A stretch of 64,000 nt of DNA from Macrostomum lignano. Lineage: Eukaryota. The stretch's first letter is position 1. Each line of letters opens with the position of its first letter. Where the stretch lies: assembly GCA_002269645.1 (NCBI GenBank), contig NIVC01001049.1:62001-126000 (forward strand), in the 5' to 3' direction. A model generated the notes under the pieces. The model was not told where the DNA came from and did not search any database. It was given only the letters and a program-made list of their open reading frames with translations. Below are positions 16,570 through 64,000 of this stretch, piece by piece. Position numbers and translations under genes: made by a program.

Positions 16570-16757
16570 ATTCACTCAGTGAGCAATCTGATCACAAATT
16601 CACCCAGTGAGCAATCTGATCACGATTCACTCAGTGAGCAATCTGATCACAAATTCACCCAGTGAGCAATCTGATCACGATTCACTCAGTGAGCAATCTG
16701 ATCACAGATCTTCACTCAGTGAGCAATCTGAGCACAAATCTTCACTCAGTGAGCAAT
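16570..16757. repeat. Tandem repeat with CAGTGAGCAATCTGATCAC core
   Basis: About 6-7 near-identical units. Confidence 0.85.
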
Positions 16758-16998
16758 CCCTGATAAAGTCGAATTTATGCATTTTGCATGCTGCATGCAA
16801 ATTTCGTTATGAAAGAGTTTCTCACGAAGATTTTTCTCTCGAAAATATTTCGAAATTGTCACTGTGTTGAGCAGACTGAAATTATTGATTCGGTACATGC
16901 CTGCACATTCGGTACGATGCGGATCCCCCCGAATCGATCGAGCTTCAACTTCGACTCGACACCGTTTTGCATCTCCCAAGCCGCTCACCCAGCCAGCA

Positions 16999-17517: not shown

Positions 17518-17814
17518 ACGCGCCGAAGGAACGGCGGACTTCGACGGGTGAACATTTTCTTCCGAGCGACGCCGTACACCATCGGGACGGCTGAGTATCG
17601 CGGGTCAGGCGGAGGGGCCACCTGGGTGAAGCTGTTCGCTGCCACCTGAGCTGCCTCTGCGACTCGCGCTATTCGAGGTCAATCTAGCCAAACTGCTGAA
17701 CCGGAAATTCTGTTTTAGTTTTGAGAGCGGAGAAATAAACGCCAAATATTAATCACTCGAATGTTTAATCCGCTGATTGGCTCTTTTTCTAGCTTTTGGG
17801 AAACTAGCCACCAG

Positions 17815-21139: not shown

Positions 21140-24100
21140 TCACCCTCTGCCGCTCATGCGGAACTGCACAGCCAGGACTTTTGCATCGGGGCTGCCGGCC
21201 AGGGCGGAGGATTCGGCCGGAACGGCGGTGGAGTTGAAGAGGCGGCACTCGACCTTCGATCTTGTCCGCTGCTCCACGGACAGCAGGCTGGCTGATGTGG
21301 CCGAGAAGGCTGGCTTCACGTCCTGAGCGCTGAGCTCGTTGCACCCTGCAACTGAAATTTGCAGCGGGGAGAGGCCTGTATTGATGCCACCAGAGGCGCC
21401 AGCACCAGAGGCGCCAGCACCAGAGGCGCCAGCACCAGAGGCGCCAGCACCAGAGGCGCCAGCACCAGAGGCGCCAGCACCAGAGGCGCCAGCACCAGAG
21501 GCGCCAGCACCAGAGGCGCCAGCACCAGAGGCGCCAGCACCAGAGCACCCACTACTCACCAGCGTAGACGTCAACCTCGCAGAAGTTGAAGTAGTTCTGA
21601 GTGCTGGCGGTGAGGCCTGTGCGGTTCTTGTACAGGGCCAGGTAGCGGCCGGACACCGGCTGGGAGCAGGTGAGAGGGATCGGGTTGGTGGCGTCGGTCG
21701 GCACCCCGGTCCAGTAGGAGCAGCGGATGAACAAGCTTTGGTCGAAGCTGGACCACACCGCCTGGTTGGATGATATGCCTGAGAATATCATGGGGAATTT
21801 CATCTGGTGAATTGCATTCTGGGGAATTTTATCTGGAGAATTGTGTACTCTGTGGGTCGCGCAGATTCTAAGGAATTGCATTTGTAGGAATTTTCATCTG
21901 GAATTGTATCCGGGGAAGTGCATCTGGGGGAATTGCAACTGGGGAATCGCATCTAAGGGAATTTTATCCGGGGAATTGCATCTGGGGAATCGCATCTAAG
22001 GGAATTTAATCCGCGGAATTGCATATGGGGGAATTGTATCTGGGAATTGCATCTGGGGGAATTGTGTCTGGGGAATTGTATATGGGGGAATTGTATCTGG
22101 GAATTGCATATGGGGGGAATTGTATCCGGGGAATTGCATATGGGGGAATTGTGTCTGGGGAATTGTATCCGGGGAATTGCATCTGGGGGAATTGTATCTG
22201 GGAATTGCATATGGGGGGAATTGTATCCGGGGAATTGCATATGGGGGAATTGTATCTGGGAATTGCATATGGGGGGAATTGTATCCGGGGAATTGCATAT
22301 GGGGGAATTGTGTCTGGGGAATTGTATCCGGGGAATTGCATCTGGGGGAATTGTATCTGGGTGAATCACATCCGGGTAATCGCTGACTCACCGAGGCTAA
22401 CCTGGGTGAAGCGGATCTCATCAGAGGCATCTAGACGGTTCCACACCTGGACACTAGCGATGCGGTATTCCTGTTGCAGGTCCAGCATCCACCAGGGCAC
22501 GGCGTCAGCACCAGACATTGATTGTGTCTCAATTGTCAGGTGATTGTGTCTCAGTTGTCAGGTGATTGTATCTCAGTTGTCAGGTGATTGTGTCTCAGTT
22601 GTCAGGTGATTGTGTCTCAGTTGTCAGGTGATTGTGTCTCAGTTGTCAGGTGATTGCGTCTCAGTTGTCAGGTGATTGTGTCTCAGTTGTCAGGTGATTG
22701 TATCTCAGTTGTCAGGTGATTGTGTCTCAGTTGTCAGGTGATTGTGTCTCAATTGTCAGGTGATTGCGTCTCAGTTGTCAGGTGATTGTGTCTCAGTTGT
22801 CAGGTGATTGTGTCTCAATTGTCAGGTGATTGCGTCTCAGTTGTCAGGTGATTGTGTCTCAGTTGTCAGGTGATTGTGTCTCAATTGTCAGGTGATTGCG
22901 TCTCAGTTGTCAGGTGATTGTGTCTCAATTGTCAGGTGATTGTATCTCAGTTGTCAGGTGATTGCGTCTCAGTTGTCAGGTGATTGTGTCTCAGTTGTCA
23001 GGTGATTGTATCTCAGTTGTCAGGTGATTGTGTCTCAGTTGTCAGGTGATTGTGTCTCAATTGTCAGGTGATTGCGTCTCAGTTGTCAGGTGATTGTGTC
23101 TCAGTTGTCAGGTGATTGTGTCTCAATTGTCAGGTGATTGCGTCTCAGTTGTCAGGTGATTGTGTCTCAGTTGTCAGGTGATTGTGTCTCAATTGTCAGG
23201 TGATTGCGTCTCAGTTGTCAGGTGATTGTGTCTCAGTTGTCAGGTGATTGTGTCTCAGTTGTCAGGTGATTGTGTCTCAGTTGTCAGGCGATTGTGTCTC
23301 AGTTGTCAGGTGATTGTGTCTCAGTTGTCAGGAAGTGTGTCTCAGTTGTCAGGTGATTGTGTCTCAGTTGTCAGGTGATTGTGTCTCAATTGTCAGGTGA
23401 TTGTGTCTCCAGTTGTCGGGTGATTGTGTCTCAATTGTCAGGTGATTGTGTCTCAGTTGTCAGGTGATTGTGTCTCAGTTGTCAGGTGATTGTGTCTCAG
23501 TTGTCGGGTGATTGTGTCTCAATTGTCAGGTGATTGTGTCTCAGTTGTCAGGTGATTGTGTCTCAGTTGTCAGGTGATTGTGTCTCAGTTGTCAGGTGAT
23601 TGTGTCTCAGTTGTCAGGTGATTGTCTCAGTTGTCAGGTGATTGTGTCTCAATTGTCAGGCGATTGTATCTCAGTTGTCAGGTGATTGTGTCTCAATTGT
23701 CAGGTGATTGCGTCTCAGTTGTCAGGTGATTGTGTCTCAGTTGTCAGGTGATTGTGTCTCAGTTGTCAGGTGATTGCGTCTCAGTTGTCAGGTGATTGTG
23801 TCTCAGTTGTCAGGTGATTGTGTCTCAATTGTCAGGTGATTGCGTCTCAGTTGTCAGGTGATTGTGTCTCAGTTGTCAGGTGATTGTGTCTCAGTTGTCA
23901 GGTGATTGTGTCTCAGTTGTCAGGCGATTGTGTCTCAGTTGTCAGGTGATTGTGTCTCAGTTGTCAGGAAGTGTGTCTCAGTTGTCAGGTGATTGTGTCT
24001 CAGTTGTCAGGTGATTGTGTCTCAATTGTCAGGTGATTGTGTCTCCAGTTGTCGGGTGATTGTGTCTCAATTGTCAGGTGATTGTGTCTCAGTTGTCAGG

Positions 24101-24797
24101 TGATTGTGTCTCAGTTGTCAGGTGATTGTGTCTCAGTTGTCGGGTGATTGTGTCTCAATTGTCAGGTGATTGTGTCTCAGTTGTCAGGTGATTGTGTCTC
24201 AGTTGTCAGGTGATTGTGTCTCAGTTGTCAGGTGATTGTGTCTCAGTTGTCAGGTGATTGTCTCAGTTGTCAGGTGATTGTGTCTCAATTGTCAGGCGAT
24301 TGTATCTCAGTTGTCAGGTGATTGTGTCTCAGTTGTCAGGTGATTGTGTCTCAGTTGTCAGGTGATTGTGTCTCAGTTGTCAGGTGATTGTCTCAGTTGT
24401 CAGGTGATTGTGTCTCAATTGTCAGGCGATTGTATCTCAGTTGTCAGGTGATTGTGTCTCAGTTGTCAGGTGATTGTGTCTCAGTTGTCAGGTGATTGTG
24501 TCTCAGTTGTCAGGTGATTGTGTCTCAGTTGTCAGGTGATTGTCTCAGTTGTCAGGTGATTGTGTCTCAATTGTCAGGCGATTGTATCTCAGTTGTCAGG
24601 TGATTGTGTCTCAGTTGTCAGGTGATTGTGTCTCAATTGTCAGGTGATTGTGTCTCAGTTGTTAGGTGATTGTGTCTCAATTGTCAGGCGATTGTGTCTC
24701 AGTTGTGAGGTGATTTCTGAAAGTGATGAAGTTCAATCTCACCTCCCAAGCAGCCACAGGAGCTCAGAATGACTAGAAGCGCCGCTTGTTTTTCCAT
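21140..24797 (-). CDS. Secreted F-type lectin (fucolectin / F5-8 type C) gene, apparently interrupted
   Basis: Exon 24743-24797 is a signal peptide (MEKQAALLVILSSCGCLG|GTGAGA). Exon about 22392-22525 reads PWWMLDLQQEYRIASVQVWNRLD|GTGAGT. Exon 21560-21778 reads RCSYW..TC.QPVSGRYL..NFCEVDVY|GTGAGT. Last exon is 21140-21375. Splice phases of the last three exons agree. Confidence 0.8.
21388..21545. repeat. 15-bp intronic repeat
   Basis: Unit CCAGAGGCGCCAGCA, 10-11 copies. Confidence 0.95.
21880..22362. repeat. GGGGAATTG(C/T)AT composite intronic repeat
   Basis: Seen directly in the lectin intron. Confidence 0.9.
22520..24712. repeat. 22-bp satellite, about 100 copies
   Basis: Unit ATTGTGTCTCAGTTGTCAGGTG. 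Confidence 0.95.
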
Positions 24798-25167: not shown

Positions 25168-27110
25168 AAGCCAATTGAGAATCAATACCCCTGCCAATTG
25201 AGAATAAATACCCCTGCCAATTGAGAATCAATACCCCTGCCAATTGAGAATCAATACCCCTGCCAATTGAGAATCAATACCCCTGCCAATTGAGAATAAA
25301 TACCCCTGCCAATTGAGAATCAATACCCCTGCCAATTGAGAATCAATACCCCTGCCAATTGAGAATCAATACCCCTGCCAATTGAGAATAAATACCCCTG
25401 CCAATTCAGAATAAATACCCCTGCCAATTGAGAATCAATACCCCTGCCAATTGAGAATCAATACCCCTGCCAATTGAGAATAAATACCCCTGCCAATTGA
25501 GAATAAATACCCCTGCCAATTGAGAATAAATACCCCTGCCAATTGAGAATAAGTACCCCTGCCAATTGAGAATCAATACCCCTGCCAATTGAGAATCAAT
25601 ACCCCTGCCAATTGAGAATAAATACCCCTGCCAATTGAGAATCAATACCCCTGCCAATTGAGAATAAATACCCCTGCCAATTCAGAATAAATACCCCTGC
25701 CAATTGAGAATCAATACCCCTGCCAATTGAGAATCAATACCCCTGCCAATTGAGAATAAATACCCCTGCCAATTGAGAATAAATACCCCTGCCAATTGAG
25801 AATAAATACCCCTGCCAATTGAGAATAAGTACCCCTGCCAATTGAGAATCAATACCCCTGCCAATTGAGAATCAATACCCCTGCCAATTGAGAATAAATA
25901 CCCCTGCCAATTGAGAATAAATACCCCTGCCAATTGAGAATAAGTACCCCTGCCAATTGAGAATCAATACCCCTGCCAATTGAGAATCAATACCCCTGCC
26001 AATTGAGAATAAATACCCCTGCCAATTGAGAATAAATACCCCTGCCAATTGAGAATAAATACCCCTGCCAATTGAGAATAAGTACCCCTGCCAATTGAGA
26101 ATCAATACCCCTGCCAATTGAGAATCAATACCCCTGCCAATTGAGAATAAATACCCCTGCCAATTGAGAATAAATACCCCTGCCAATTGAGAATAAGTAC
26201 CCCTGCCAATTGAGAATCAATACCCCTGCCAATTGAGAATCAATACCCCTGCCAATTGAGAATAAATACCCCTGCCAATTGAGAATAAATACCCCTGCCA
26301 ATTGAGAATAAATACCCCTGCCAATTGAGAATAAGTACCCCTGCCAATTGAGAATCAATACCCCTGCCAATTGAGAATCAATACCCCTGCCAATTGAGAA
26401 TCAATACCCCTGCCAATTGAGAATAAATACCCCTGCCAATTGAGAATAAGTACCCCTGCCAATTGAGAATCAATACCCCTGCCAATTGAGAATCAATACC
26501 CCTGCCAATTGAGAATAAATACCCCTGCCAATTGAGAATAAATACCCCTGCCAATTGAGAATCAATACCCCTGCCAATTGAGAATCAATACCCCTGCCAA
26601 TTGAGAATAAGTACCCCTGCCAATTGAGAATAAATACCCCTGCCAATTGAGAATCAATACCCCTGCCAATTGACAATCAATACCCCTGCCAATTGAGAAT
26701 CAATACCCCTGCCAATTGAGAATCAATACCCCTGCCAATTGAGAATAAATACCCCTGCCAATTGAGAATAAATACCCCTGCCAATTGAGAATCAATACCC
26801 CTGCCAATTGACAATCAATACCCCTGCCAATTGAGAATCAATACCCCTGCCAATTGAGAATCAATACCCCTGCCAATTGAGAATCAATACCCCTGCCAAT
26901 TGACAATCAATACCCCTGCCAATTGAGAATCAATACCCCTGCCAATTGAGAATCAATACCCCTGCCAATTGACAATCAATACCCCTGCCAATTGAGAATC
27001 AATACCCCTGCCAATCGACAATCAATACCCCTGCCAATTTAGAATAAATACCCTTGCCAATTGAGAATAAATACCCCCTGTCAATCGAGAATAAATACCC
27101 CTGCCAATCG
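25168..27110. repeat. 23-bp satellite, about 84 copies
   Basis: Unit CCAATTGAGAAT(C/A)AATACCCCTG. Confidence 0.95.
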
Positions 27111-27353
27111 AGAATCCCCCACAGCATGAGGGGTCGCAAAAAAGAACCAAACAAAAAGCGAGACACAAAAATGCCGATTTCGCAGCCTGTGCTCAGCACA
27201 CAGGCGGTTCAAGCGAGTTCGAACTTAAGCAACTCAAGCAATTAATTATGATCAATAACTATATTGACACTGGGCGGCACGGCCACCCAGCTCTGAATAG
27301 AATAGGCAAAAACAGAAAAGCAAAATTTAAACAAATTCAAGCAGATGCGGGCC

Positions 27354-38200: not shown

Positions 38201-41200
38201 CGGCCGGAATCGCCGGTAGCGAATGCCGCCGTCGGCAACGTCAGCCGCTGAACTGTCGCCGCCCAGCGCCTCCTTGGCGATCGTCGAAGGCTCCGCGGTG
38301 CCAACACTGCCGCGGGTTGCTTGCGCTGCGGGCCGGGAGGAAAAATAATAATGCGGAATCAGGTTTGAAGTTGCGCAACATATTGATAGCATTAGGAAAA
38401 TCGCTTAAATATAGTTATTTACGCAACATATCGGTAGCTGGATACAGCTTCGGAAAATAGTCTAAATATAATCATTTACGCAACATATCGGTAGCTTAAT
38501 CGGAGATTTGGAGAAAGCCTAAATATAGATTTCTACGCAACATATGGGTAGCTTAATAAAGATTCAGAAAATCGTCTAAATAAAGTTATTTACGCAACAT
38601 ATCGGTAGCTTTGTCAGCCTAATTAAAAAACCCTACAGCCACAAACTCAACAGGCAAACTGCTCACAGGGTCTGTGTCGCCCAGTCCCAGAGTAGAACAT
38701 GGAGGTGGTGTGCTGCCTGGAGATGTCCCACAGTCCGTAGCGCTTCAGGCTGCTCCGCTGCAGGAACAGCAGGCCCAGGATGATGATCTCGGCAACCGGG
38801 GTCGAGTAGTCGCTGGTAGCGCCGATCTCGTTGGCGAACCAGGCAGCCAGGAGGCCGCTGTCCTCCCTGATCAGCTCCTTCTTGATCACGGTGAACTGCA
38901 GCGCGTACTTCACTACTATGAGTAGCATTGTGTAGGCGATGGCGGACAGCCAGAAGCGCTTGGTGGGGAAGGGCACGGACAGCATGCCCCACATGAACAC
39001 CACCAGCGGGTACGACAGCGAGAACACCGTGCAGTTCAACAGGTGATAGGTTACCATGGCAACGTAGCACAGCGGTGTCAGGCGGGAGAACAGCAGGTAC
39101 TGCAGCAGCAGCAGCAGCTGGCCGGCTGCCTGCCCGAGGGTCTGCGGCTCCGGCAGCGGCTCCAGCGGCACGTCGCTTGAGTCCTCGTCCTCCTGGATGC
39201 ACTCCTCCGGGTAGGGCCGGATGCTCAGCTCCACGCCGCCCTGCGCGTCCACCGCCGACTCGCCCAGGCGCTCGTCCTTGGCCTCCAGCTTGCTCTGCAT
39301 CATCTGGTCCTTGATCTTGCGGTAGTCCTCGGTGGCGCGGTCCAGCAGGCTGCACAGCACCCGCAGCAGAGCCAGCAGGTTGCGGCCCAGCGCCGACACC
39401 ACCCACCACACCAGGCTCCAGGCCCGCGAATTGCCGCCCTCCGCGCCTGCGTCCTCCTCCTCCTCGTCGTCGAAGTCCTCGTGGTCGCCTTCATAGCTGC
39501 TGGCCGACACCCCGGCAGCGGCCACGGCTGCGGCCAGGCCATCTCCGGCCAGCAGCGTGCCGGCAGCCTCCGAAGCGAGGGTTGGGTAGCCCGCCGCCAC
39601 GTGGCCTCTGCCGATGCTGCCGTCGCCGACATCGCCGAGACCGCGGACTGGCGGCGGGGGCGGGCGCTGATGGACGAAGGACAACTGCAGCCGCTGCTGG
39701 TCGGAGAGCGCCGGCGACTGAAGGGATTGGAATGTTAGGAATGGGTTGCTAGTCTGACCTATACGGATTGCTAGCCTGACCAATATGGATTGCTAGTCTG
39801 ACCAATATGGATTGCTAGTCTAGCCAATATGGATTGCTAGCCTGGCCACCCCGAACTGCCGGCCCACCTGCTGCCGGAAGTCGCTGCCGATGCTCCGCAT
39901 TAGCATGGCCTCGTTGAGGTCAACCAGCGTGTTGCTGGCACTCAGCACGGGGGTGGTGGGCGGCGGCGGCACCTCCATGAGGCTGTGCTGCAGCTGCAGC
40001 GGCTGTTCAGTCGAGGCCGACATCGCCGCGTCGTTGTCGGCACCAGCCGCTCCGTCGGTGTCCTCGCGGAAGCGGCAGCAGCAGCGGCCGCCGCGGCTGC
40101 CAGTTCGAGCTCCTCGGGAATCGGCGGACCGGCCAGCAGCAGCGAGTGCCGTTCCTCGCCCGACAGCGCCGAGGCAGTGGCGGCAGTGGCAGCGGCGGTG
40201 GGCGTGGCGCCGGCCACCAGGCGCTTGAGCTCGTCCTCGTTGATGGAGACGGAGCGGGAGTAGCGCCGCTGGCCGAGCGTGTTGATGGTCTTGCGGATCA
40301 TCTCGCCCGGCTTCTGGGCGAACTCGGTGGCCTTCAGCAGGCCCTGCTCGATGAGGTTCTCGGCGGCGGTCGGCTGCCAGTGCGGGTCGGGCTCGTCCTC
40401 GGCGGACTCGTCAATGGTGAGCACCTTGTTGCCGTCCGCGTCCACGGCGTAGAACAGGTCGCGGGTACCGGACCGGACGGCCTGGTGGGGTTGGCATGGC
40501 GGGCGGCTTCATTACTATTGGAATTGCAAGCCTGCCAATCATTATCATAGCTTAATGATGGGGCGGAGCAGCTGGCTATGGCGCCAAAACACGCGCGGGT
40601 TCGATTCCGTGCGCAAAAGATGGGGCGGAGCAGCTGGCTATGGCGCCAAAACACGCGCGGGTTCGATTCCGTGCGCAAAAAGATGGGGCGGAGCAGCTGG
40701 CTATGGCGCCAAAACACGCGCGGGTTCGATTCCGTGCGCAAAAGATGGGGCGGAGCAGCTGGCTATGGCGCCAAAACACGCGCGGGTTCGATTCCGTGCG
40801 CAAAAGATGGGGCGGAGCAGCTGGCTATGGCGCCAAAACACGCGCGGGTTCGATTCCGTGCGCAAAAGATGGGGCGGAGCAGCTGGCTATGGCGCCAAAA
40901 CACGCGCGGGTTCGATTCCGTGCGCAAACAAAGTTGGCCAATTTCCAGAGGGCACAGAGAGTGTTCATGCCTGGGAAACTACGTAAATTGTTATATTGCT
41001 TTTGATAGGAGGCGGACCCAATGTTCATATTTTGATATGCTGTGCCTTTCTTATGGCTCCATTGATATTCATAGAGCTTTTTGTGCAAAAATTAGGATTC
41101 TATTTTATCATGTGTTGCTAAGAATGATAAAGTAGATTCATAAAACCAATGAGCCGAGCCGTGCCATCTTTTTGGGTTTTAGGCATTTTCTAAGAAACGT

Positions 41201-47200: not shown

Positions 47201-50200
47201 TTTGTCTGTCTCAGCACGGCATTCTCGTACAATTGAGTCTTGAGCAGCGCTGCAATGTGTACAGGGTGGGAGGGTGAGTGCAATTAGTGACAAACAATAA
47301 AATAGTTATTGCAACACGCAATGCGGAATGGGGTTCCCCAGAATGCGCTGATCTTAAGAACCAGGTTACCACAATCTACAGTCACACAGAATTAGGTGCC
47401 CGCCAGACTCCCCAGACTCCCCAGACTCCGCAGGTCCCCAGACTCGCCCAGACTCCACAGGTCCCCAGACTCCCGCAGACTCCACAGGTCCCCAGACTCC
47501 CCAGACTCCACAGGTCCCCAGACTCCCCCAGACTCCACAGGTCCCAGACTCCACAGGTCCCCAGACTCCCCCAGATTCCACAGGTCCCCAGACTCGCCCA
47601 GACTCCACAGGTCCCCAGACTCCCCCAGATTCCACAGGTCCCCAGACTCGCCCAGACTCCACAGGTCCCCAGACTCCCCCAGACTCCACAGGTCCCCAGA
47701 CTCCACAGGTCCCCAGACTCCACAGGTCCCCAGACTCCCCCAGATTCCACAGGTCCCCAGACTCGCCCAGACTCTACAGGTCCCCAGACTCGCCCAGACT
47801 CCACAGGTCCCCAGACTCCACAGGTGCCCAGACTCCACAGGTCCCCAGACTCCCCAGATTCCACAGGTCCCAGACTCCCCCAGATTCCAAAGGTCCCCAG
47901 ACTCGCCCAGACTCCACAGGTCCCCAGACTCGCCCAGACTCCACAGGTCCCCAGACTCCACAGGTCCCCAGACTCCCCAGATTCCACAGGTCCCCAGACT
48001 CCACAGGTGCCCAGACTCCACAGGTGCCTAGACTCCACAGGTGCCCAGACTCCCCACACTCCGCAGGTGCCCAGACTCTCCGCAGCCACTCACTCCGCCG
48101 CAGCGCAGCAGTCTTGGAGTTGAAGGCTCCGCCTGCCCGCTTGCCAGCTGCGCCGCCGCCGGAGGCCGCGGTCGCGGGGTCCTCAAAATCGTCCTCGATC
48201 TCGGATTCGCGGCCGGCCGCCGCCGTCATCTCGACGTCAACTTCGATGGGCCGCTCGATGGAGCTGGGCGGGGCCGGCTGCAGCTGCTGGATGGGCTGCT
48301 CGGTGGCCGAGGGGTCCAGGTCCGGCTGCATGTTGGACAGCTGCAGGAAAGTCTTGTGGAAGTTCTTCACGTGGATCATGATCACGATGATGAAGGAGGT
48401 GGGAACAGCAGGTTGAGGAAGAGCTGCGGAGTCTCGTACTTCTCGATGCCGATCTCCTTCAGGCTGCAATGGATCGGGGGCAAATCTGCCGCTAGCTGAC
48501 ATTGTAAATCTGCCGCTAACTACAGATGCAGATTTCAAATCTGCCGCTAACTACAGATGCAGAGATGCCAAAACTGCCGCTAACTACAGATGCAGAGATG
48601 CCAAATCTGCCGCTAACTACAGATGCAGAGATGCCAAAACTGCCGCTAACTACAGATGCAGAAATGCCGAAACTGCCGCTAACTACAGATGCAGAGATGC
48701 CAAATCTGCCGCTAACTACAGATGCAGAGATGCCAAAACTGCCGCTAACTACAGATGCAGAGATGCCAAAACTGCCGCTAACTCCAAATGCAGAGATGCC
48801 AAAACTGCCGCTAACTACAGCTGCAGAGATGCCAAAAATGCCGCTAACTACAGATGCAGAGATGCCAAAAATGCCGCTAACTACAGATGCAGAGATGCCA
48901 AAAATGCCGCTAACTACAGATGCAGAGATGCCAAAAATGCCGCTAACTACAGATGCAGAGATGCCAAAAATGCCGCTAACTACAGATGCAGAGATGCCAA
49001 AAATGCCGCTAACTACAGCTGCAGAGATGCCAAAAATGCCGCTAACTACAGATGCAGAGATGCCAAAAATGCCGCTAACTACAGATGCAGAGATGCCAAA
49101 AATGCCGCTAACTACAGCTGCAGAGATGCCAAAAATGCCGCTAACTACAGATGCAGAGATGCCAAAACTGCCGCTAACTACAGATGCAGAGATGCCAAAA
49201 ATGCCGCTAACTCCAGATGCAGAGATGTCAAAACTGCCGCTAACTACAGATGCAGAGATGTCAAATCTGCCGCTAACTACAGATGCAGAGATGCCAAAAC
49301 TGCCGCTAACTACAGATGCAGATATTTCAACAAACTGGCAAACAGCTAAGTATAAATAAAACCAGGATTTCCAGCCGCAGCAAGCAACTCACGTGGCTGG
49401 CTGAATGCCTGTCAGCCTGGTAATGAACTCGGGCACGCTCTGGAACTGGTAGGCGTAGATGAGCAGCAGGGTGAGCATGGAGTAGAGCATGATGCCCCAG
49501 AAGCAGACAATCAGCTGCCGGCGCCAGAACCCGTAGAACAGCTGCGAGGCGCGAAAAGAATGGGCGATGACCGTTGGATTAACTTCCTGTGTACTCAAGC
49601 TGCACTAGGCTACACAGTTTGTTCTTAATGTTAGCCTGTCACTCTTTAGAATAGCCTGTCACTCTTTAGAATAGCCTGTCACTCTTTAGAATAGCCTGTC
49701 ACTCTTTAGAATAGCCTGTCACTCTTTAGAATAGCCTGTCACTCTTTAGAATAGCCTGTCACTCTTTAGAATAGCCTGTCACTCCTCAGGATAGTCTGTC
49801 ACTTTTTAAGACAGCCTGTTACTGATTTGTAATAAGGATAGCCTGTCACTGCTTTGTATTCAGGATGCGCATTGCCAGCATTCACAAGCCTCATCACAAT
49901 CAAAATGAGCTCACCCTGAACGTGATGATGAAGTACAGGAAGATGGCCATCACAATGATATGGGAGATGTTGACAACCGAGCGTGAGCACATGAGCACCC
50001 AGAAGGTGCAGCAGATGATCAATGAGTACTTGGACATGACCTCGATGATCAGAGTCTCCATGGTCTTGCGGCGCCGCCGGTGCAAGGAATGGCCGCGAAG
50101 GTGGTACAGTTCGAGCGCGGCCCGGGTGTCGTGGCTGACGCCCTGCCGCCTCTCGGACAGGAAAGTCCACAGCGTGAAGTAGAACACGCAGCAGAAGGTC

Positions 50201-52076
50201 AGCTGAGCGGCGAATGTCAGCATGGGCGCCTCGTACACCTGAGCGGGATTGGGTGTCGGGTAGACTGTGAAAGACAGTAGGGTAGTGCAAGAGACTAAGT
50301 AGAGTGTGAGGGAGATTGGGGAGTAGAGTGTGAAGGAGAGTTGGGAGTAGAGTGTGAGGGAGAGTGGGGAGTAGAGTGTGAAGGAGAGTGGGGAGTAGAG
50401 TGTGAGGGAGAGTGGGTAGTAGAGTGTGAGGGAGAGTGGGGAGTAGAGTGTGAAGGAGAGTGGGTAGTAGAGTGTGAGGGAGAGTGGGTAGTAGAGTGTG
50501 AGGGAGAGTGGGGAGTAGAGTGTGAAGGAGAGTGGGTAGTAGAGTGTGAGGGAGAGTGGGGAGTAGAGTGTGAGGGAGAGTGGGGAGTAGAGTGTGAAGG
50601 AGAGTGGGGAGTAGAGTGTGAGGGAGAGTGGGTAGTAGAGTGTGAGGGAGAGTGGGTAGTAGAGTGTGAGGGAGAGTGGGGAGTAGAGTGTGAGGGAGAG
50701 TGGGGAGTAGAGTGTGAAGGAGAGTGGGGAGTAGAGTGTGAGGGAGAGTGGGTAGTAGAGTGTGAGGGAGAGTGGGTAGTAGAGTGTGAGGTAGAGTGGG
50801 TAGTATAGTGTGAGGGAGAGTGTGAGGGAGAGTGGCGAGTAGAGTGAGGGAGAGTGTGAGGGAGAGTGGGAGTAGTGTGAGGGAGAGTGGGGAGTAGAGT
50901 GTGAGGGAGAGTGGGTAGTAGAGTGTGAGCGAGAGTGTGAGCGAGAGTGGCGAGTAGAGTGAGGGAGAGTGTGAGGGAGAGTGGGCAGGCTAAGGTCGCA
51001 CCTGCAGTCCGATCTGAGCAAAGGAGGACTGATTCCGCCTGGCCAGGTAGATCTCGGGCAGGTTGAAGTTGAAGGCATAGTTGGCCAGCAGCAGGCCGGT
51101 GGAGTACACCACCAGCAGCGGCGACAGGCCCAGCGTGAACCTCCGGGTGCCGGGCGACAGCCAGAGCAGGCAGGAGAGCAGCAGGAACGGCAGGGTGCAA
51201 AACGACACGTAGGTGACGCTCCAGGCCATCATGCTGACCAGGGTGAGGATGTAGCTGGCGCCCATGAGGAACTGGCGCAGTCTGAGGAACATCTTCACCA
51301 GCGGGTCGCTCAGGGTGTACAGCAGCCAGGTCAGCTTGGCCTCGTGCTGCACTGTCGAGCTCTCCAGCGACGGAGCTCGGGCGGGTGGCGGCGGCGGCGG
51401 AGGCGGTAAGTGGGGAAGAGCGGCGGAGGTCGCAGCGCCGACGGCGGGTTCGTCCTGAGTCGACGCGGCCGCAGAGAAGCCGGCGTCGGAGGCGGCGTCG
51501 CAGACGCTGTTTGCAGCGGCGGCGGCGGCAGCAGCTGCGGCGGCCCCCCGGGGCGGCATGGAGAGCAGCGCCAGCGGTTCCGAGGTGGTGCGGCGCGGGC
51601 CCTGGTGCTGCAGCGGGATCGACTCGGTAGGAAAGGGAGCGTCGATCAGGCACTGCTCAGGATAATAGGAGAAAGAGATGGGATCTGACTGAGATGGGGA
51701 GATCTCGGAGCAGGCGGGTCGGGTTGAAAACTATTAACAATAGATAAGCCAAACACCGATAAACACTGGACAGCATCCGGAGCTCCACCTGCTGGAGTTC
51801 AGCCCAATCTGCTGAGTTCAATGCCCAGAGCAATAAATATGCGAGTTTCTATAAAGCTTAAATAAAAACTTGGAGACCATTTTCTTAACCATGAAAATGC
51901 TGCATCGAGATATGAAAATATAGCATTATGGTTTGGTACAGCTGAGCACCTGTGAGGAAGAGCAGCGGCCAAATTAAAAATGCTCAATAAATATGCTTAT
52001 CGACAGACAGACAAACACTAAGACAGGCAGACAGACAGACAGACAGACAAACACACACTAAGACAGACAGACAGAC

Positions 52077-56565: not shown

Positions 56566-59500
56566 GGCAAACGTAATAAACCCAATCAGGCAATCAGTAC
56601 AACTGCAATACAAAGCATGGCCTGCGCCCCACCCAACAGACACACAGTGGGATCGCACAGACAGCCAGGGACAGAAACCGTGAGCATCGGGCAGCGGGCA
56701 CTCACATCTGCTCTGTAGGGTCCCCGATCGTGCAAGTAGATCTGCAGCGCCAGATAAAAATAGAATACTAGGATGAGCAGCGGAGAGGCGAACTCAGACG
56801 TGCTAATAGTGTTGGCGAAGTGCACCTGGGCAGACGAGCAGTTGGACTGGATCAGGTAGTGCAGGCCTAGCAGCCTGGGTGAATTGACCATAATGGGATG
56901 CGGCAATGGCATTATTAATTGGCTTCGTTTATGCGAGTAAACACCTGCTTTTGAACTCAGCGACTCTCGTGCTAGTTTTGGGACAGACAGACATCTGTCT
57001 ATTAGGGATGTTTAGGGGCGATTCTCATGCCTGTTTAGGGGCGATTCTCATGCCTGTTTAGGGGCGATTCTCATGGCTGTTTAGGGGCGATTCTCATGCC
57101 TGTTTAGGGGCGATTCTCATGCCTGTTTAGGGGCGATTCTCATGCCTGTTTAGGGGCGATTCTCATGCCTGTTTAGGGGCGATTCTCATGCCTGTTTAGG
57201 GGCGATTCTCATGGCTGTTTAGGGGCGATTCTCATGCCTGTTTAGGGGCGATTCTCATGCCTGTTTAGGGGCGATTCTCATGCCTGTTTAGGGGCGATTC
57301 TCATGCCTGTTTAGGGGCGATTCTCATGCCTGTTTAGGGGCGATTCTCATGGCTGTTTAGGGGCGATTCTCATGCCTGTTTAGGGGCGATTCTCATGGCT
57401 GTTTAGGGGCGATTCTCATGCCTGTTTAGGGGCGATTCTCATGCCTGTTTAGGGGCGATTCTCATGCCTGTTTAGGGGCGATTCTCATGGCTGTTTAGGG
57501 GCGATTCTCATGGCTGTTTAGGGGCGATTCTCATGCCTGTTTAGGGGCGATTCTCATGCCTGTTTAGGGGCGATTCTCATGCCTGTTTAGGGGCGATTCT
57601 CATGCCTGTTTAGGGGCGATTCTCATGCCTGTTTAGGGGCGATTCTCATGCCTGTTTAGGGGCGATTCTCATGCCTGTTTAGGGGCGATTCTCATGCCTG
57701 TTTAGGGGCGATTCTCATGCCTGTTTAGGGGCGATTCTCATGGCTGTTTAGGGGCGATTCTCATGGCCTGTTTAGGGGCGATTCTCATGCCTGTTTAGGG
57801 GCGATTCTCATGCCTGTTTACAGAGTATTCTCATATCTTTAAGGGGGCCAGCTCCCAGCTCAGAAGGCGCTGGCGCACCTGGCAGTCGTGGAATTGGCCC
57901 GCAGCCCTCGAATTTCTGTGACGCCGGGAACTGGTACAGGAAGATGCTGGCCAGGTGGCAAGCCGTGTACAGCGCCAGCCAGCGACGCTGCCAGCGGAGG
58001 CCGCGCCGGCGAAAGTGCAGCCGGCCGGCAGTCCAGAGCAGCGCCGCCAGCAGGAAGGACAGCAGGTAGACGCTGGACAAGAGGCAGGGCAGGCAGATCG
58101 CGGCTGTGCACATGAGCGCCAGGAACAGCACGAACATCAGCCAGTCGCCCATTCGCCGCAGGTTCCGCCTGTAGCCGTCCAGGACGCCGCAGTCCGGGCA
58201 GGCGTCGCCAACGGCGGCCGGGAAGAACTCGGCCCGGTGACGCCAGATGGCGCCGAACATGCCGGCCGACAGCAGCAGGGTGAGCGGCTCCGGGCACAGC
58301 AGCCTGGCGATGTGGTAGAACTCCGTCCGGTGCAGAGGCTGCAGCCCCACCTGCCGCCACAGCAGGTCCGCCTCGCCTGCGGTGGGGGGGAGAGTGACCG
58401 CTGGCCTGAGTCTGGCACGCCCGCCTGCGCGCTTCCAACTTAAATCTGGCCCGGACTCATCTATGCATCCCAAACCCACATCTATCCATTCCAAACCCGC
58501 ATCTATCCATCCCAAACCCACATCTATACATCCCAGACCCATATCTATCCATCTCAGAATTAAATCGATCCATATCATACCACATCTATCCATCTCAGAC
58601 CCTCATATTTAGATCATCTCAGATCTACATCTATCCATCCCAAACCCACATCTATCCATCCCAGACCCACATCATCCATCCCAGACCCACATCTATCCAT
58701 CCCAGACCCACATCTATTCATTCCAAACCCACATCTATCCATCCCAGACCCACATCTATCAATCTCAAACCCACATCTATCCATCCCAAACCCACATCTA
58801 TCCATCCCAGACCCACATCTATTCATTCCAAACCCACATCTATCCATCCCAGACCTACATCCATCAATCTCAAACCCACATCTACCCAACAACCCAGTGC
58901 CGGGTCTCACAGTCAGCAAGGATGCTGCCATACGGCGGGTGTGCGCCCAGCACAATCTGGAAAGCGACGTGGCAGAGGCTGAAGGAGGCGCTGCACACGA
59001 TGAGAGCCAGGTTGTAGGCCAGGAAGCAGCCTGGAAGTTCAGACACGGGGCGTAGCGCGGGGATCATTTGAGGTCTCAATGCTGGGATTTCAAGGCAGTC
59101 AAGTCAGTTAAGCAAGCCAGCAGTCATGCCGATTCAACTGGCACCCGAACACGCAAACTGATGCATGCGCAGACACGAGCTCACACAGGGTGTACTTTTG
59201 GAAATTGCCCTTCGTTTCTGCTGGTGGTCACGTGACAACTGGCTGGCTTCGGCCGATAGTGACTCGCCTGCAGGCTGTGGGGCCTCAACTGAGGCACCCC
59301 AACCCCAGTCACAAGCTGAACTCAACTGAGGCACCCCAACCCCAGTCACAAGTTGGACTCAACTGGGGCACCCCACCCTAGTCACAAGCTGAACTCAACT
59401 GAGGCACCCCAACCCCAGTCACAAGCTGAACTCAACTGGGGCACCCCGACCCCAGTCACAAGTTGGACTCAACTGGGGCACCCCAACCCCAGTCAAGAGT

Positions 59501-60373: not shown

Positions 60374-62390
60374 CTGAAATGTAAACAATCAAATTGCCAC
60401 ACAATGTGTTTCAGAATCTGAATATGCCAAAAATGAAGTACAAACTACATACCAAAAAACAGCGATACTTGAATCAGGCCCTTGCATAGCAGCAGAATTG
60501 TATGAGTTTCTGCCATTCTGTTGACAAATTCTGTTTAATAACTCAATCCATTTCTACCTGACAATTGGCCATAAATTGGAGCAATTAAATTATGGAATTG
60601 AAGTAATGAAATAGAATCATTGTTTTAGAATCTTCTAGCAGTTAAAAAATGATTTTTAATAATTAAAACAAAAATACAAACTTTTTGTCAGGATTAGCTT
60701 GGTTGATTAAAGCAAACTGGTTTATGTGGAAAAATATTCACTTTAGAAAGTCTAGATTAGTAAATTTATATTTCTAGACATTTCTACAATCTTCTGTCTT
60801 AAATAATTTCCTAATAAGAAATCTTAATTTACTTGTATTAATAAAATTTTACCAATAAAATATCTAACTAGTCGATTTCATGATAAATAACAATATAAAT
60901 TAATAATACTATGATAGACCTACAAACAAAATTAGTAGATAATAATGTTTGCTAACATTGGTGGCAATATAGACTAAAGGTACTAGGATCTACTTTCACC
61001 TTTATTTACTATAAGCTAGGACATTTTGATTGATAGCTTAATATTAAAAGTTAATATTTGACATGTAAACTGACTGATTACACAAGTGGAACTAAAGCTT
61101 AGTGATCTAGCATAGCACTCTTATGTGCTATTAGCTTAGGCTGGATTCTAAATATAGTCTCATTAATTTAGAGCTGAATTTGAATCTTGGCTTTGATCTA
61201 CTTATGCAAATTAATGCTGCTCATTTTGCAGACAGGTAATAAACCCCCTAATGCATAGTGAAAATCCCTACTATTAAAAGACTAATAAAAATGAAAAAAA
61301 CATTATTTGAACATAAAAGATGAATTGAAAAATTACTAAGATGTCAAGTCTTCTAGGGGGGGGGGATTACTAAAAATATATCTAAAAAATATAACTAAAA
61401 ATAGTGTTGGATACCAGTCTGTTAATAAGCATTAATCCATTAATAAGTGTTGATAAAAGTTAAGAATTTTTGTTAATGCTAACAGACTGCCCTTAAGATT
61501 TTTTGCACTAATGGATTAACAAATTTGCATCAATAATTTTGTGAGCTAATAACAAATTCATCTATTATTGTTAATGTCAATGGCAATGTCAATGACCAAA
61601 GACACAAAGAAAGAACAAAAATATAAGTCTAACAAGAAGTTGCAACATTACAAATGTATTCAAAATTATCTAAGTGCCTAATAATTCTCTTAGCTTATGA
61701 TGATGGTCACGCAAATGTAACAACTTCTTGTACATAAAAATTAATTGCTTTGATTCACTTCTTTCCCAATCTTTTGTAACTTTCTGCACCTGCACTTGCA
61801 ATGCTACTGAAATACTGATTTGTATTTTATTAATAAATAATTAGCTTTCAAGTTAATTAGTGTCAAAATAAATTTTACTTCTTTTACAATATGGCATATA
61901 CTTCTTTTAGTAGTAGGCCCTATTATTCTTACATTTTTTTACAATTATTATGTATTACTTTTTTAGCTTGTAAATTGCTTAGATGACCCCTGTGTTTTGC
62001 TAAAAAGATGGAAAAGCAAAAACAGTACATTATGATATCTGTTTTGGAAAAATTGCAAGATTTTTATATTTTCTATGCTAACTTTAATGGATTAAAACCA
62101 CAGATACTAAAATAACTAGATAGGCCACTAAGGCATATATATTAAGTAAAACAGCTTTCTACTTTTAGTTCAATAGCAATAGCAAAGAAAGCATATATAA
62201 GCTTATTGTATAAAAAAGGTGGCTGAAATGGCTTTGATAAGTTTAGAAGTCCAAGCTTGCAAGTATCAGCAACTTGCTAATTGGTTCAGCAATAATGTAT
62301 ATTAGCCAGTCCACTAAAAATATATTTTTAGCAGCTTTATGTTAGAAGTCTAAAAAAGGCAATAATTGAATAAAAATTGAGGTAGGCAAG

Positions 62391-62686
62391 CATACATGCG
62401 CAACCTCCAAAATTCGGTCGGCCGTGCGACTTAGTTTTAACAAAAATGCGACGTAGTTTTTGGCCAAAAATGCGACTTGCATGTAAAAAAACCGTAAAGC
62501 AAAATCAACGCAACTTTGGGTAAACGGCAGGAGTAACTATAACTTTCTTATTAAGCCAAAATGCCTCGTCAGCTATTTAGTACTACTACTTAGGTGTTTT
62601 TGGGTGGGCATTTTTGCGACTTCCTTGGTTGGTCGCCAAATCGGTCGGCCGGATCGGCCGACTCGGCCGACTGTTGCGCATGAATG
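62391..62686. mobile_element. Non-autonomous hAT-type transposon (MITE), 296 bp
   Basis: TIRs CATACATGCGCAAC (62391-62404) and GTTGCGCATGAATG (62673-62686) match at 13 of 14 positions. Perfect 8-bp TSD TAGGCAAG at 62383-62390 and 62687-62694. Subterminal TGCGAC and TCGGTCGGCC repeats. Confidence 0.9.
62518..62581 (+). pseudogene. 28S rRNA gene fragment (R2 / I-PpoI target region) inside the MITE
   Basis: GGGTAAACGGCAGGAGTAACTATAACTTTCTTATTAAGCCAAAATGCCTCGTCAGCTATTTAGT versus conserved 28S GGGTAAACGGCGGGAGTAACTATGACTCTCTTAAGGTAGCCAAATGCCTCGTCATCTAATTAGT. Confidence 0.9.
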
Positions 62687-62923
62687 TAGGCAAGTGGGGG
62701 AGATTGAACATACTATTGAACTGAAAATAGCTTATACCCAAATGCTTAGGCCCTATCATATAAAGTATAAAAAGCATCATGTCAAAAAAGAAGTATCATG
62801 TTTTAGTTATGTCAGTGTCATAACATAGTCATAGTCATGTCAAGTTTTAATAGTTTGAAAGGCAACATATATGCTAGGATTTCCTAGTATACAACAAGGG
62901 TCTTACCATTTTTCAGCATATAT

Positions 62924-63242
62924 CAGGATATATCTAGGCATTCCAATCCTAGGATCCCGGGATTTAGCCTCAAAACATGGGATTTCAATCTTGGGATTTT
63001 TTGGGACTTGAAATTTTAGGATTTATGATCCTTGGGATTACAACAGTGTGGGATTGCGATCCCGGGATTGTAAGGCTTAAATTCCAGGATTGTTTTGGGA
63101 TTCAAAGCGGGATCCCGGGATTACTCTCAGTTAGGATTTTCCGGGATTAGTGATCCCAGGATTTTAAACCATTGGGATTTTAGGATTTTTTAATCCCAGG
63201 ATTATAAATTGTCAGGATTTTGGAATCCCTAGATATATCCTG
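62924..63242. mobile_element. Foldback / MITE-like element with internal GGGATT repeats
   Basis: 23-bp inverted repeat CAGGATATATCTAGGCATTCCAA (62924-62946) / TTGGAATCCCTAGATATATCCTG (63220-63242), one mismatch. No clear TSD. Confidence 0.5.
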
Positions 63243-64000
63243 GCGTATATCCCTAGATACATTGTGTGTGTCAAATGCCATTTTTTGTATTGGCATATAA
63301 ACCTGGCATAAAAACAAGGTCTTATCATTTTTTCCAGCATTAAACCTGGCATATACTAATACACAATCCAAACTGTGGCCCAATTGTACTGAGTGGCCTA
63401 TCTAATTATTCTAGTATCTACACATGATTAACACTCATTAACAGGGCCCAACACTGAAGATATCAAAGCTTATAAAAAGGAATTATTACAATAGGATTTC
63501 TTTGGCTTTGATTTATGATCCTTTTTTCACCCACATTTTGGTGAAAAATTGATGATAATCCCTAAGTAATTTGCTACTTTAATGATCATGGCTTGCTCCA
63601 AATAAGCAAAAGTTAATAAACTAGGCCTAAGCTTATATGTTTCACTAGAAAAATTGAACAGAATAGTACCACTAAGCTAACCTAGTTTTTCCTCTGGCAT
63701 AGCAATGCATTGACTATCAAAAAATCCTAGCATACAAATGACCTTCTTCAAAGTTGGCATACATATTTCAGCATACAAATTATGCCAATTTTTAATGTAC
63801 GAATTTTGGCACACAAAAATACACAAATTTTGGAGAGCAGTACATTTTAACATAAATATTAACATATTTTCATAAAATTAAGAAAAAACTTAAAAGGCTA
63901 AAATATTCCTTATTATAGATAGCTTTACTTGAAATACTAAATTAAATAAAAACAAATCAAATTCAGGATAAATGGAACTGCTTCCAAAAAGTATGTATTA

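What the first reader, a model, noticed from the sequence alone, without database searches (positions are those of the whole stretch)
62383..62694. hAT-type MITE carrying the 28S rDNA hotspot targeted by R2, I-PpoI and Pokey, altered exactly at the cut site
Seen: a complete 296-bp element (14-bp TIRs, perfect 8-bp TSD, subterminal repeats) whose centre is a roughly 64-bp 28S match, weakly extending upstream to about 62496. Flanking mismatches are scattered single substitutions, but CTTAAGGTAGCC is changed to CTTATTAAGCC. Known: this 28S segment holds the R2 insertion site (TTAA/GGTAGC), the I-PpoI site and a TTAA used by Pokey piggyBac elements; 8-bp TSDs typify hAT. Inference: a DNA transposon captured the rDNA target site and can disperse it. 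It may act as a mobile landing pad or decoy for rDNA-specific elements, a cut-and-repaired scar, or a source of 28S-homologous small RNA. I know of no described hAT MITE with this cargo.
Basis: partly seen in the sequence, partly recalled or inferred. Interest (0 to 1): 0.85.

Follow-up and report, generated by a model that had tools for sequence, protein, structure and literature searches.

The report
Flatworm mini-transposon carrying a 28S fragment
A 296-bp non-autonomous cut-and-paste transposon of the flatworm Macrostomum lignano carries about 90 bp copied long ago from the 28S ribosomal RNA gene, and a second copy elsewhere in the genome has the same cargo; it is a real but modest curiosity and the cargo is most likely a passenger.

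Summary
Window 62391-62686 is a complete 296-bp MITE with 14-bp terminal inverted repeats (13/14), a perfect 8-bp target-site duplication (TAGGCAAG) and subterminal repeats.

Its centre (62494-62581) matches the universally conserved 28S segment around the R2/I-PpoI/Pokey site at 71/89 identity, E=1e-13.

The window is Macrostomum lignano, assembly Mlig_3_7, contig NIVC01001049.1. In about 225 kb of other M. lignano contigs I found one more copy. It has its own 8-bp duplication (TTTTATAT) and the same 28S core. A paralogous locus shows the empty site. So this is a mobile family that captured the fragment once, not a one-off. A rough estimate is 3,400 copies (95% CI 86-19,000).

In both copies the changes from 28S pile up in the octamer AGGTAGCC that holds the R2 nick. 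Most of this lesion is shared, so it was probably already in their common ancestor. Neither copy has a usable R2, I-PpoI or Pokey-type 28S site.

Assignment to hAT is unproven: the inverted repeats start CATAC, not YARNG, and P and Merlin elements also make 8-bp duplications.

Best reading: captured filler DNA carried as a passenger. Landing-pad, decoy and small-RNA roles have no support.

The parts
62383..62390 (.). 5' target-site duplication TAGGCAAG
   Evidence: Identical 8-mer at 62687-62694. The base before it (G, 62382) equals the element's last base, so a 9-bp reading is also possible.
62391..62404 (+). 5' terminal inverted repeat CATACATGCGCAAC
   Evidence: 13/14 complementary to 62673-62686. 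Identical to the reverse complement of the 3' TIR of the second copy in L124, so this is the family consensus TIR.
62405..62493 (+). 5' subterminal arm with a TCGGTCGGCCG motif and three direct (A)AAAATGCGAC-type repeats (62425-62491)
   Evidence: the repeat finder families D1-D3. 88% identical to the L124 copy. No significant 28S similarity.
62494..62581 (+). 28S rDNA-derived core, sense orientation, corresponding to 28S GTGAAGAAATTC...CTAATTAGT
   Evidence: blastn against the consensus of 75 real 28S loci: 71/89, E=1e-13. Rfam LSU_rRNA_eukarya positions 2255-2310. Same core with the same borders in the L124 copy, 86% identical.
62547..62557 (+). Scrambled R2 / I-PpoI / Pokey target (CTTATTAAGCC in place of CTTAAGGTAGCC)
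   Evidence: 7 of the window copy's 12 differences from 28S fall in AGGTAGCC. The L124 copy reads CTTATAAGGGCT at the same place. R2 nick position from PMC13000458.
62582..62672 (+). 3' subterminal arm: inverted copy of the ATGCGAC motif (GGCATTTTTGCGAC, 62607-62620) and GGCCGAC-type repeats (62638-62671)
   Evidence: the repeat finder I2, I3, I5, I6, D3, D4. CpG-rich; only 62% identical to the L124 copy, mostly through CpG loss in L124.
62673..62686 (-). 3' terminal inverted repeat (reverse complement CATTCATGCGCAAC)
   Evidence: One private T-to-A change relative to the family consensus seen in three other ends.
62687..62694 (.). 3' target-site duplication TAGGCAAG

Best explanation
This is one copy of a multi-copy family of miniature non-autonomous cut-and-paste DNA transposons (MITEs) of Macrostomum lignano. 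The family makes 8-bp target-site duplications; the superfamily is probably hAT but is not proven.

Once in its history, the family's progenitor acquired about 90 bp of 28S rDNA as internal filler between two arms of about 100 bp. Those arms hold the terminal inverted repeats and the subterminal repeats (putative transposase-binding motifs). The most likely route is the usual one for internally deleted elements: interrupted gap repair after excision, with a template switch to an abundant ectopic template, here the rDNA (inferred).

The chimera then amplified using a transposase supplied in trans. The 28S piece is a passenger. It is as decayed as the 5' arm, and the R2/I-PpoI/Pokey site inside it was probably already scrambled in the common ancestor of the two copies read. 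It therefore offers no usable target.

Shown: the element anatomy, the 28S homology, a second copy with the same cargo, and an empty paralogous site. Inferred: the capture mechanism, mobilisation in trans, and absence of function.
For: Anatomy: TIRs, 8-bp TSD and subterminal repeats; the element folds as a hairpin, z = -4.7.

28S homology: E=1e-13 against a consensus of real 28S loci.

Host: M. lignano Mlig_3_7.

Second copy: L124:17173-17469 on contig NIVC01000598.1, with its own TSD TTTTATAT, the same TIR and the same 28S borders.

Empty site: the paralogous locus L130 has one TTTTATAT at 16835-16842 and no element.

Abundance: one extra copy in 224,554 bp sampled, about 3,400 copies per 764 Mb (95% CI 86-19,000).

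No special constraint on the core: it is 86% identical between copies, against 88% for the 5' arm.

The lesion is shared: both copies differ from 28S at positions 12, 28, 34-38 and 41 of the 64-nt core, and six of these eight lie in AGGTAGCC. My hand count on alignment A3 gives about 4 events in 19 nt between the two copies at that site. That is about the average rate between copies, so the site does not look like a continuing hotspot.

Timing: perfect TSDs around a core that is 20% diverged from 28S imply that the insertions post-date the capture.
Against: Only two copies could be read, so the ancestral state of the scrambled site and the copy number are poorly constrained.

No autonomous partner was found, so the transposase and the superfamily are unknown.

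M. lignano's own 28S could not be read here. Some shared differences, especially in the 5' 22 nt of the core, might be host-specific 28S states or come from a diverged rDNA pseudogene.

The strong concentration of ancestral change at the R2 nick site (P about 1e-5 if positions are treated as independent) is not predicted by neutral capture. It is less striking if it reflects two compensating indels.
Confidence: 0.75

Rival explanations
1. The scrambling of the nick site is not neutral. Either only a cut-site-dead version of the cargo could spread, because many dispersed intact R2 or homing-endonuclease targets would be nicked or invaded and so selected against. Or the captured template was an rDNA unit, or the founder element itself, already cut at the R2 site and repaired imprecisely. 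This refines the best explanation rather than replacing it.
For: Six of the eight positions where both copies differ from 28S lie in the 8-nt AGGTAGCC spanning the R2Bm nick (nick position from PMC13000458). The 23 nt downstream of it were intact in the inferred ancestor, since each position is retained in at least one copy. R2 occurs in Platyhelminthes.
Against: The lesion can be written as two small compensating indels plus a substitution. Counted as events, the significance drops to roughly 0.02-0.08 by my own binomial estimate. R2 has not been shown in Macrostomum in the papers read, and the planarian R2 relative is not 28S-specific. Two copies are too few to infer selection. The 5' 22 nt of the core were also heavily changed in the ancestor, so clustered change is not unique to the nick site.
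Confidence: 0.15
2. One reading: the dispersed 28S core serves as a landing pad or protein-binding decoy for rDNA-specific elements, or as a source of 28S-homologous small RNAs.
For: The core covers the whole 60-bp substrate used for R2Bm in vitro (CAAGCGCGGG...CCTCGTC). Parts of the upstream and downstream stretches are well preserved. M. lignano has an active piRNA pathway that silences transposons (abstract of PMC4604429, listed).
Against: The nick site is destroyed in both copies, and there is no insertion in either. The core is no better conserved than the 5' arm. The L124 copy has lost most CpGs and 4 of 14 bases of its 5' TIR, as expected for neutral decay. No expression or small-RNA data were examined.
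Confidence: 0.05
3. The 28S resemblance is chance, helped by the element's own AAAATGC-type repeats. Or the feature is a stray rDNA pseudogene fragment with fortuitous flanking repeats rather than a transposon.
For: Rfam scores the match at only 10.5 bits, E=4.8. GCCAAAATGCCTCGT resembles the subterminal repeat at 74% (family D2).
Against: blastn E=1e-13 with a single hit in 64 kb. The alignment score is 24 standard deviations above shuffles. There is a second copy with independent TSDs and an empty paralogous site.
Confidence: 0.01

Closest known systems
Pack-TYPE / transduplicating non-autonomous TIR transposons (Pack-MULE, Pack-CACTA; internally deleted Ac/Ds- or P-type elements with filler DNA)
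   Same: Short terminal arms sufficient for mobilisation in trans, a piece of host DNA captured between them, and amplification of the chimera. This comparison rests on my own knowledge of these families; the review PMC10946416 describes such modular reshuffling in general terms.
   Different: The cargo is a fragment of a multicopy rRNA gene rather than of a protein-coding gene. The element is MITE-sized (296 bp). The host is a flatworm. The capture mechanism was not observed.
Pokey / mPok (piggyBac) of Daphnia
   Same: A DNA transposon family with MITE derivatives that carries rDNA-derived sequence internally and is tied to the same 28S hotspot.
   Different: Pokey inserts into the 28S TTAA and carries IGS- and ITS2-derived repeats. 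The Macrostomum element carries the 28S target region itself in scrambled form, makes 8-bp rather than TTAA duplications, and both copies seen lie outside rDNA.
SINE28 (mammals) and 5S-derived SINEs / Cassandra TRIMs
   Same: Mobile elements that incorporate rRNA-gene sequence.
   Different: Those are retrotransposons. The 5S module supplies a Pol III promoter, which is a function. SINE28 is listed as a SINE containing 28S rDNA fragments. Here a cut-and-paste element carries an internal 28S piece with no evident role.
Actinopterygian R2 lineage with a 28S-derived sequence in its 3' UTR (Kojima et al. 2016, PMC5035012)
   Same: A mobile element that has internalised 28S sequence from the neighbourhood of its own target.
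   Different: That element is R2 itself, and the acquisition coincides with a shift of its insertion site. Here the carrier is an unrelated DNA transposon.

Membership tests
MITE (non-autonomous TIR DNA transposon) | Terminal inverted repeats flanked by a target-site duplication of fixed length | tested here: met
   14-bp TIRs. 8-bp TSDs at two independent insertions (TAGGCAAG, TTTTATAT).
MITE (non-autonomous TIR DNA transposon) | Small size and no coding capacity | tested here: met
   296-297 bp. Stops in all six frames except one 68-codon stretch. That stretch finds only spurious repeat proteins among 1.84 billion representatives.
MITE (non-autonomous TIR DNA transposon) | Multiple dispersed copies; insertion polymorphism or an empty site | tested here: met
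   Second copy on another contig. Empty paralogous site in L130 with a single TTTTATAT. Copy number only roughly bounded at 86-19,000.
hAT superfamily | 8-bp target-site duplication | tested here: met
   Two of two insertions. In both, the base before the 5' TSD is G, equal to the element's last base, so a 9-bp reading cannot be excluded.
hAT superfamily | Terminal motif 5'-YARNG in the TIR (from my knowledge of Ac, hobo, Tam3, Hermes and Tol2) | tested here: not met
   The consensus TIR starts CATAC. Position 3 is T, not a purine. Position 5 is C, not G.
hAT superfamily | Target consensus nTnnnnAn | tested here: inconclusive
   TTTTATAT fits at both positions. TAGGCAAG fits only at position 7. 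Only two sites.
hAT superfamily | Autonomous partner with matching TIRs encoding a hAT transposase (DDE/RNase H fold plus hAT C-terminal dimerisation domain) | not tested
   No partner in about 289 kb of M. lignano DNA read. A whole-genome DNA search is not possible with these tools.
P or Merlin superfamilies (alternatives with 8-bp TSDs) | 7-8 bp (P) or 8-9 bp (Merlin) TSD with short TIRs and a matching transposase | tested here: inconclusive
   The TSD length fits both. The TIR start CAT... recalls the P-element CATGATG only loosely (from memory). No transposase was found.
Functional R2 / I-PpoI / Pokey 28S target site | Intact CTCTCTTAAGGTAGCC with the nick position AAGG|TAGCC | tested here: not met
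   The window copy reads CTTTCTTATTAAGCC and the L124 copy CTGTCTTATAAGGGCT. Site definition and, for I-PpoI, from my own knowledge.
TE with captured rDNA module (as tabulated in PMC10946416) | Significant homology of an internal TE segment to an rRNA gene or spacer, present family-wide | tested here: met
   E=1e-13 to 28S. Present in both copies with identical borders. 'Family-wide' rests on two copies only.

The most novel reading that the evidence does not exclude
The family spreads many look-alikes of the R2/I-PpoI/Pokey target through the genome. It could do so only because the nick site was destroyed, by endonuclease cutting and misrepair or by selection against cleavable copies. The scrambled octamer would then be a fossil of conflict between a DNA transposon and an rDNA-specific endonuclease. 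The still-recognisable flanks might titrate R2 protein as a decoy.
Probability: 0.1. Interest if true: 0.7.

Novelty: new member of a known kind. Interest (0 to 1): 0.4.

Why it matters
It adds a DNA-transposon example, in a flatworm, to the short list of mobile elements that carry rRNA-gene sequence. A 2024 review lists only Pokey/mPok (IGS), SINE28 and 5S-derived elements.

It has a practical side. Dispersed 28S-like fragments can produce false rDNA signals in read mapping, FISH probes or R2-site surveys in Macrostomum.

If the family-level lesion at the R2 nick site proves non-neutral, the family would be a natural test of what happens when a site-specific endonuclease's target is scattered across a genome. 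That bears on the use of R2 for safe-harbour gene insertion. On present evidence it is a passenger fragment of modest interest.

Tried and rejected
1. Rfam at gathering thresholds finds nothing in the window. The permissive scan gives only a 10.5-bit LSU hit. The homology had to be shown with a consensus of real 28S loci.

2. A scan of viral contigs for real 28S was empty.

3. Two protein searches with Piezo-exon ORFs to identify the host found nothing. The host came instead from an exact look-up of the 898-aa ORF and from NCBI names of ankyrin paralogues.

4. I used the element's longest stop-free frame as a protein proxy for a DNA search. It returned only repeat-rich bacterial proteins and no element-derived ORFs.

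5. A look-up of the exon ORF nearest the element (57808-58593) is not on record. The paralogous sites of the window copy could therefore not be reached, and no empty site is shown for this copy itself.

6. A look-up of a 36-aa member of the same protein cluster returned bacterial gut-metagenome contigs. That look-up was wasted.

7. I noticed that the window copy's 3' TIR contains GCGCATGAATG, exactly the 11 nt that follow ...TAATTAGTGAC in 28S, and colinear with the core (p about 0.005). I considered that the TIR itself was 28S-derived or that microhomology drove the capture. I rejected this as probably chance. The other three ends read GCGCATGTATG or a decayed form of it, so the eleventh match is a private T-to-A change.

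8. A lenient alignment extended the 28S similarity through the whole 5' arm. The extension adds only about 3.5 score units and is not significant against shuffles. Rejected.

9. The element-specific pattern AACTTTGGGTAAACRGCAGGAGTAACTAT is absent from the prokaryotic genome and viral collections.

10. Sampling nine more M. lignano loci beyond L124 gave no third copy, by blastn or by an nhmmer profile.
Full report
**What is at the coordinates.** The sequence at 62383-62694 is as described.

- The 5' end is CATACATGCGCAAC (62391-62404). The 3' end is GTTGCGCATGAATG (62673-62686). They are 13/14 complementary.
- The 8-mer TAGGCAAG flanks the element on both sides (62383-62390 and 62687-62694). 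The TIR pattern occurs nowhere else in the window.
- Inside the ends are subterminal repeats: TCGGTCGGCCG / GGCCGAC-type motifs, and three direct plus one inverted copy of (A)AAAATGCGAC.
- As a single strand the 296-bp element folds into a long hairpin, z = -4.7 against shuffles. This is usual for MITEs.

**Is the 28S match real?** Rfam finds nothing at gathering thresholds. With permissive settings it gives only a 10.5-bit local hit to LSU_rRNA_eukarya positions 2255-2310 (E=4.8). I therefore built a reference from real data.

I made a consensus from 75 of them with 200-nt flanks.
- blastn of that consensus against the whole window gives a single significant hit: 62494-62581, 71/89 identities, 4 gaps, E=1e-13.
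- A Smith-Waterman score of 50.5 compares with 10.7 +/- 1.7 for 2000 shuffles of the element.
- A lenient alignment runs on through the 5' arm, but that extension is not significant (p about 0.17-0.2).

So about 88 bp of the element are derived from 28S, in sense orientation. They run from GTGAAGAAATTC to CTAATTAGT. This span includes the whole 60-bp substrate used for R2Bm in vitro.

**The cut site.**
- In R2Bm assays the bottom strand is nicked between AAGG and TAGCC (sequences of the cleaved oligonucleotides in PMC13000458).
- Pokey's preferred flanking bases place its TTAA at CTCTTAAGG (PMC3849761).
- I-PpoI cuts CTCTCTTAA/GGTAGC (my own knowledge).
- The window copy reads CTTTCTTATTAAGCCAAAATGCC where 28S reads CTCTCTTAAGGTAGCCAAATGCC.
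- In a 64-nt ungapped comparison, 7 of its 12 differences fall in AGGTAGCC.

**Host.**
- The 898-aa ORF at 2971-5667 (minus strand) is on record on exactly one contig: NIVC01001049.1 (373,835 bp) of GCA_002269645.1. Window coordinate plus 62,000 gives the record coordinate.
- NIVC00000000 is the Mlig_3_7 assembly of the flatworm Macrostomum lignano (PMC5730564).
- Ankyrin paralogues of a window gene are named 'Macrostomum lignano' by NCBI.
- The window otherwise holds Piezo exons, ankyrin genes and a very large number of intronic minisatellites.
- The element lies in an AT-rich stretch (34% GC), nested in a larger inverted-repeat element.

**Is it a family, and is the cargo family-wide?** No tool here searches a eukaryotic genome by DNA. 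I therefore sampled M. lignano contigs through exact look-ups of ankyrin paralogues. This gave 224,554 bp beyond the window.

blastn and an nhmmer profile found one further copy, L124:17173-17469 on contig NIVC01000598.1.
- It is 297 bp long.
- It is flanked by its own perfect 8-bp duplication, TTTTATAT (17165-17172 and 17470-17477).
- Its 3' end reverse-complements to CATACATGCGCAAC, identical to the window copy's 5' TIR.
- It carries the same 28S core with the same borders.

The paralogous locus L130 (contig NIVC01000704.1; gene pair BOX15_Mlig005929g1/g2) aligns on both sides of the insertion. It has a single TTTTATAT at 16835-16842 and no element. That is a textbook filled-site / empty-site pair.

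So the element transposes with 8-bp duplications, and the 28S cargo predates the split of the two copies.

One copy in 224.5 kb of unbiased sample extrapolates to about 3,400 copies in the 764-Mb assembly (95% CI 86-19,000). There is also an independent argument that the cargo is old relative to the insertions. The core is 20% diverged from a source that cannot itself change, yet the duplications are perfect.

**How the copies differ.**
- Overall there are 61 mismatches and 3 gap columns in 298 columns.
- Identity is 88% in the 5' arm, 86% in the core and 62% in the 3' arm.
- Eighteen differences are CpG in the window copy against TpG or CpA in L124, and none run the other way. CpG counts are 22 and 5.
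- The L124 copy has also lost 4 of 14 bases of its 5' TIR.

The core therefore decays like the rest of the element. I see no sign of constraint on it.

**The lesion at the nick site is largely inherited.**
- In the 64-nt core both copies differ from 28S at positions 12, 28, 34-38 and 41. Six of these eight are in AGGTAGCC (P about 1e-5 for that site, 4e-4 for any 8-nt window, treating positions as independent).
- The three sequences are 28S CTTAAGGTAGCCAAATGCC, window CTTATTAAGCCAAAATGCC and L124 CTTATAAGGGCTAAATGCC.
- Both copies have extra T-rich bases right after CTTA, and both have lost the TA of GGTAGCC.
- My hand count on alignment A3 gives about 4 events in 19 nt between the two copies at this site. 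That is about the average rate between copies, so the site does not look like a continuing hotspot.
- The downstream 23 nt (AAATGCC...TTAGT) were intact in the inferred ancestor. The upstream 22 nt were already heavily altered.
- Counted as events (two compensating indels plus substitutions), the clustering is only suggestive: roughly 0.02-0.08 by my own binomial estimate.

With two copies I cannot tell apart three possibilities: an accidental complex indel, a template-switch junction or endonuclease scar in the source, or selection against cleavable copies. Either way, neither copy offers an intact R2, I-PpoI or Pokey-type 28S site, and neither holds such an insertion.

**A lead that dissolved.** The window copy's 3' TIR contains GCGCATGAATG, the 11 nt that directly follow the captured segment in 28S (p about 0.005 for any 11-mer within 110 nt). 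The family consensus is GCGCATGTATG. The eleventh match is a private T-to-A change of this copy. I treat it as coincidence.

**Superfamily.** The 8-bp duplication fits hAT. But the TIR starts CATAC rather than YARNG, only one of the two targets fits nTnnnnAn, and no autonomous element was found. P and Merlin elements also make 8-bp duplications. In both insertions the base before the 5' duplication is G, equal to the element's last base, so a 9-bp reading is possible. 'hAT-type' is a reasonable guess, not a result.

**Mechanism I commit to.**
1. An autonomous element, or an earlier deletion derivative, lost its interior during gap repair after excision.
2. It gained about 90 bp copied from the abundant rDNA by template switching (inferred).
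3. The two arms of about 100 bp kept the TIRs and the subterminal repeats, which are putative transposase-binding motifs (inferred from their arrangement).
4. The chimera was mobilised in trans and amplified. Mobility and multiplicity are shown.
5. The 28S piece rides along. Absence of function is inferred from equal decay and a dead target site.

My confidence is about 0.75. The refinement that the dead site reflects endonuclease action or selection gets about 0.15. A landing-pad, decoy or small-RNA function gets about 0.05. Chance or pseudogene gets about 0.01.

**Comparison with what is known.** The 2024 review of rDNA-TE interplay tabulates rDNA-derived TE sequences: Pokey/mPok (IGS), 5S-derived SINEs, Cassandra/Ajax TRIMs and SINE28. 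It lists no DNA transposon with a 28S gene fragment (PMC10946416). A fish R2 lineage carries 28S-like sequence in its 3' UTR (PMC5035012). R2 is known in Platyhelminthes: trematodes have it, and a non-specific relative occurs in Schmidtea. It was not mentioned for Macrostomum in the papers I read.

The element works like Pack-TYPE or filler-carrying non-autonomous TIR elements. It is a new member of that kind with unusual cargo.

**Limits.**
- Only two copies were read.
- The host's own 28S was not examined.
- There is no autonomous partner.
- There are no expression or small-RNA data.
- There is no empty site for the window copy itself.

Noticed in passing
window 62102-63419: The MITE is nested in a larger element of about 1.3 kb bounded by 31-nt imperfect inverted repeats (AGATACTAAAATAACTAGATAGGCCACTAAG / reverse complement, 90%), flanked by AC on both sides. 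Inside it, 62924-62946 and 63220-63242 form another 23-nt inverted-repeat pair (96%) around GGGATT-rich repeats. This looks like a small nest of DNA transposons in an AT-rich (34% GC) block.
   Followed up: partly
window 62391-62686 vs L124:17173-17469: Strongly one-sided CpG decay between the two copies: 22 CpG against 5. Eighteen differences are CpG to TpG/CpA in L124 and none the other way. This suggests cytosine-methylation-type decay of some TE copies in M. lignano, or a large age difference.
   Followed up: partly
window 62382 and L124:17164: In both insertions the base before the 5' TSD is G, the same as the last base of the element. The direct repeat can therefore be read as 9 bp (GTAGGCAAG, GTTTTATAT). 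Either this is chance (about 1 in 16 or less), or there is a target preference, or the TSD is 9 bp with ends offset by one base.
   Followed up: partly
window 62676-62686: The 3' TIR holds GCGCATGAATG, the exact 11 nt that follow the captured segment in 28S (p about 0.005). The family consensus differs by one base, so this is probably coincidence.
   Followed up: yes
window 1-60300 (whole window): Extraordinary density of minisatellites: 73 TRF rows, with arrays up to 2.2 kb, for example 22519-24715 (22-bp unit x100) and 25170-27116 (23-bp x85). Most lie between exons of a Piezo-like gene on the minus strand; exon ORFs at 38647-39783, 49900-51078 and probably 57808-58593.
   Followed up: no
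window 40557-40928: Six near-perfect (99%) tandem copies of a 62-bp unit containing GGTTCGATTCC, a tRNA T-arm-like box. ARAGORN calls no tRNA in the window. Possibly a tRNA-derived SINE or satellite.
   Followed up: partly
window 2971-5667 (minus strand): Single-exon 898-aa protein made of about five repeated modules of roughly 100 aa, with a weak CBM_20 (starch-binding) match, plus a distinct C-terminal domain. Function unknown.
   Followed up: no
L124 vs L130 flanks: The paralogous loci differ by 5.6-9.8% substitutions in the 0.5-1 kb next to the insertion. This is well above the roughly 2% genome-wide paralogue SNP rate reported for M. lignano (PMC10733133). They also differ by small indels such as an AAATGT duplication next to the TSD.
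   Followed up: no
protein cluster of P0013: The 90%-identity cluster of an M. lignano ankyrin protein also contains 36-aa proteins that lie in bacterial gut-metagenome contigs next to DUF3791/DUF3990 genes. This is a clustering artefact worth knowing about when using cluster members for look-ups.
   Followed up: yes
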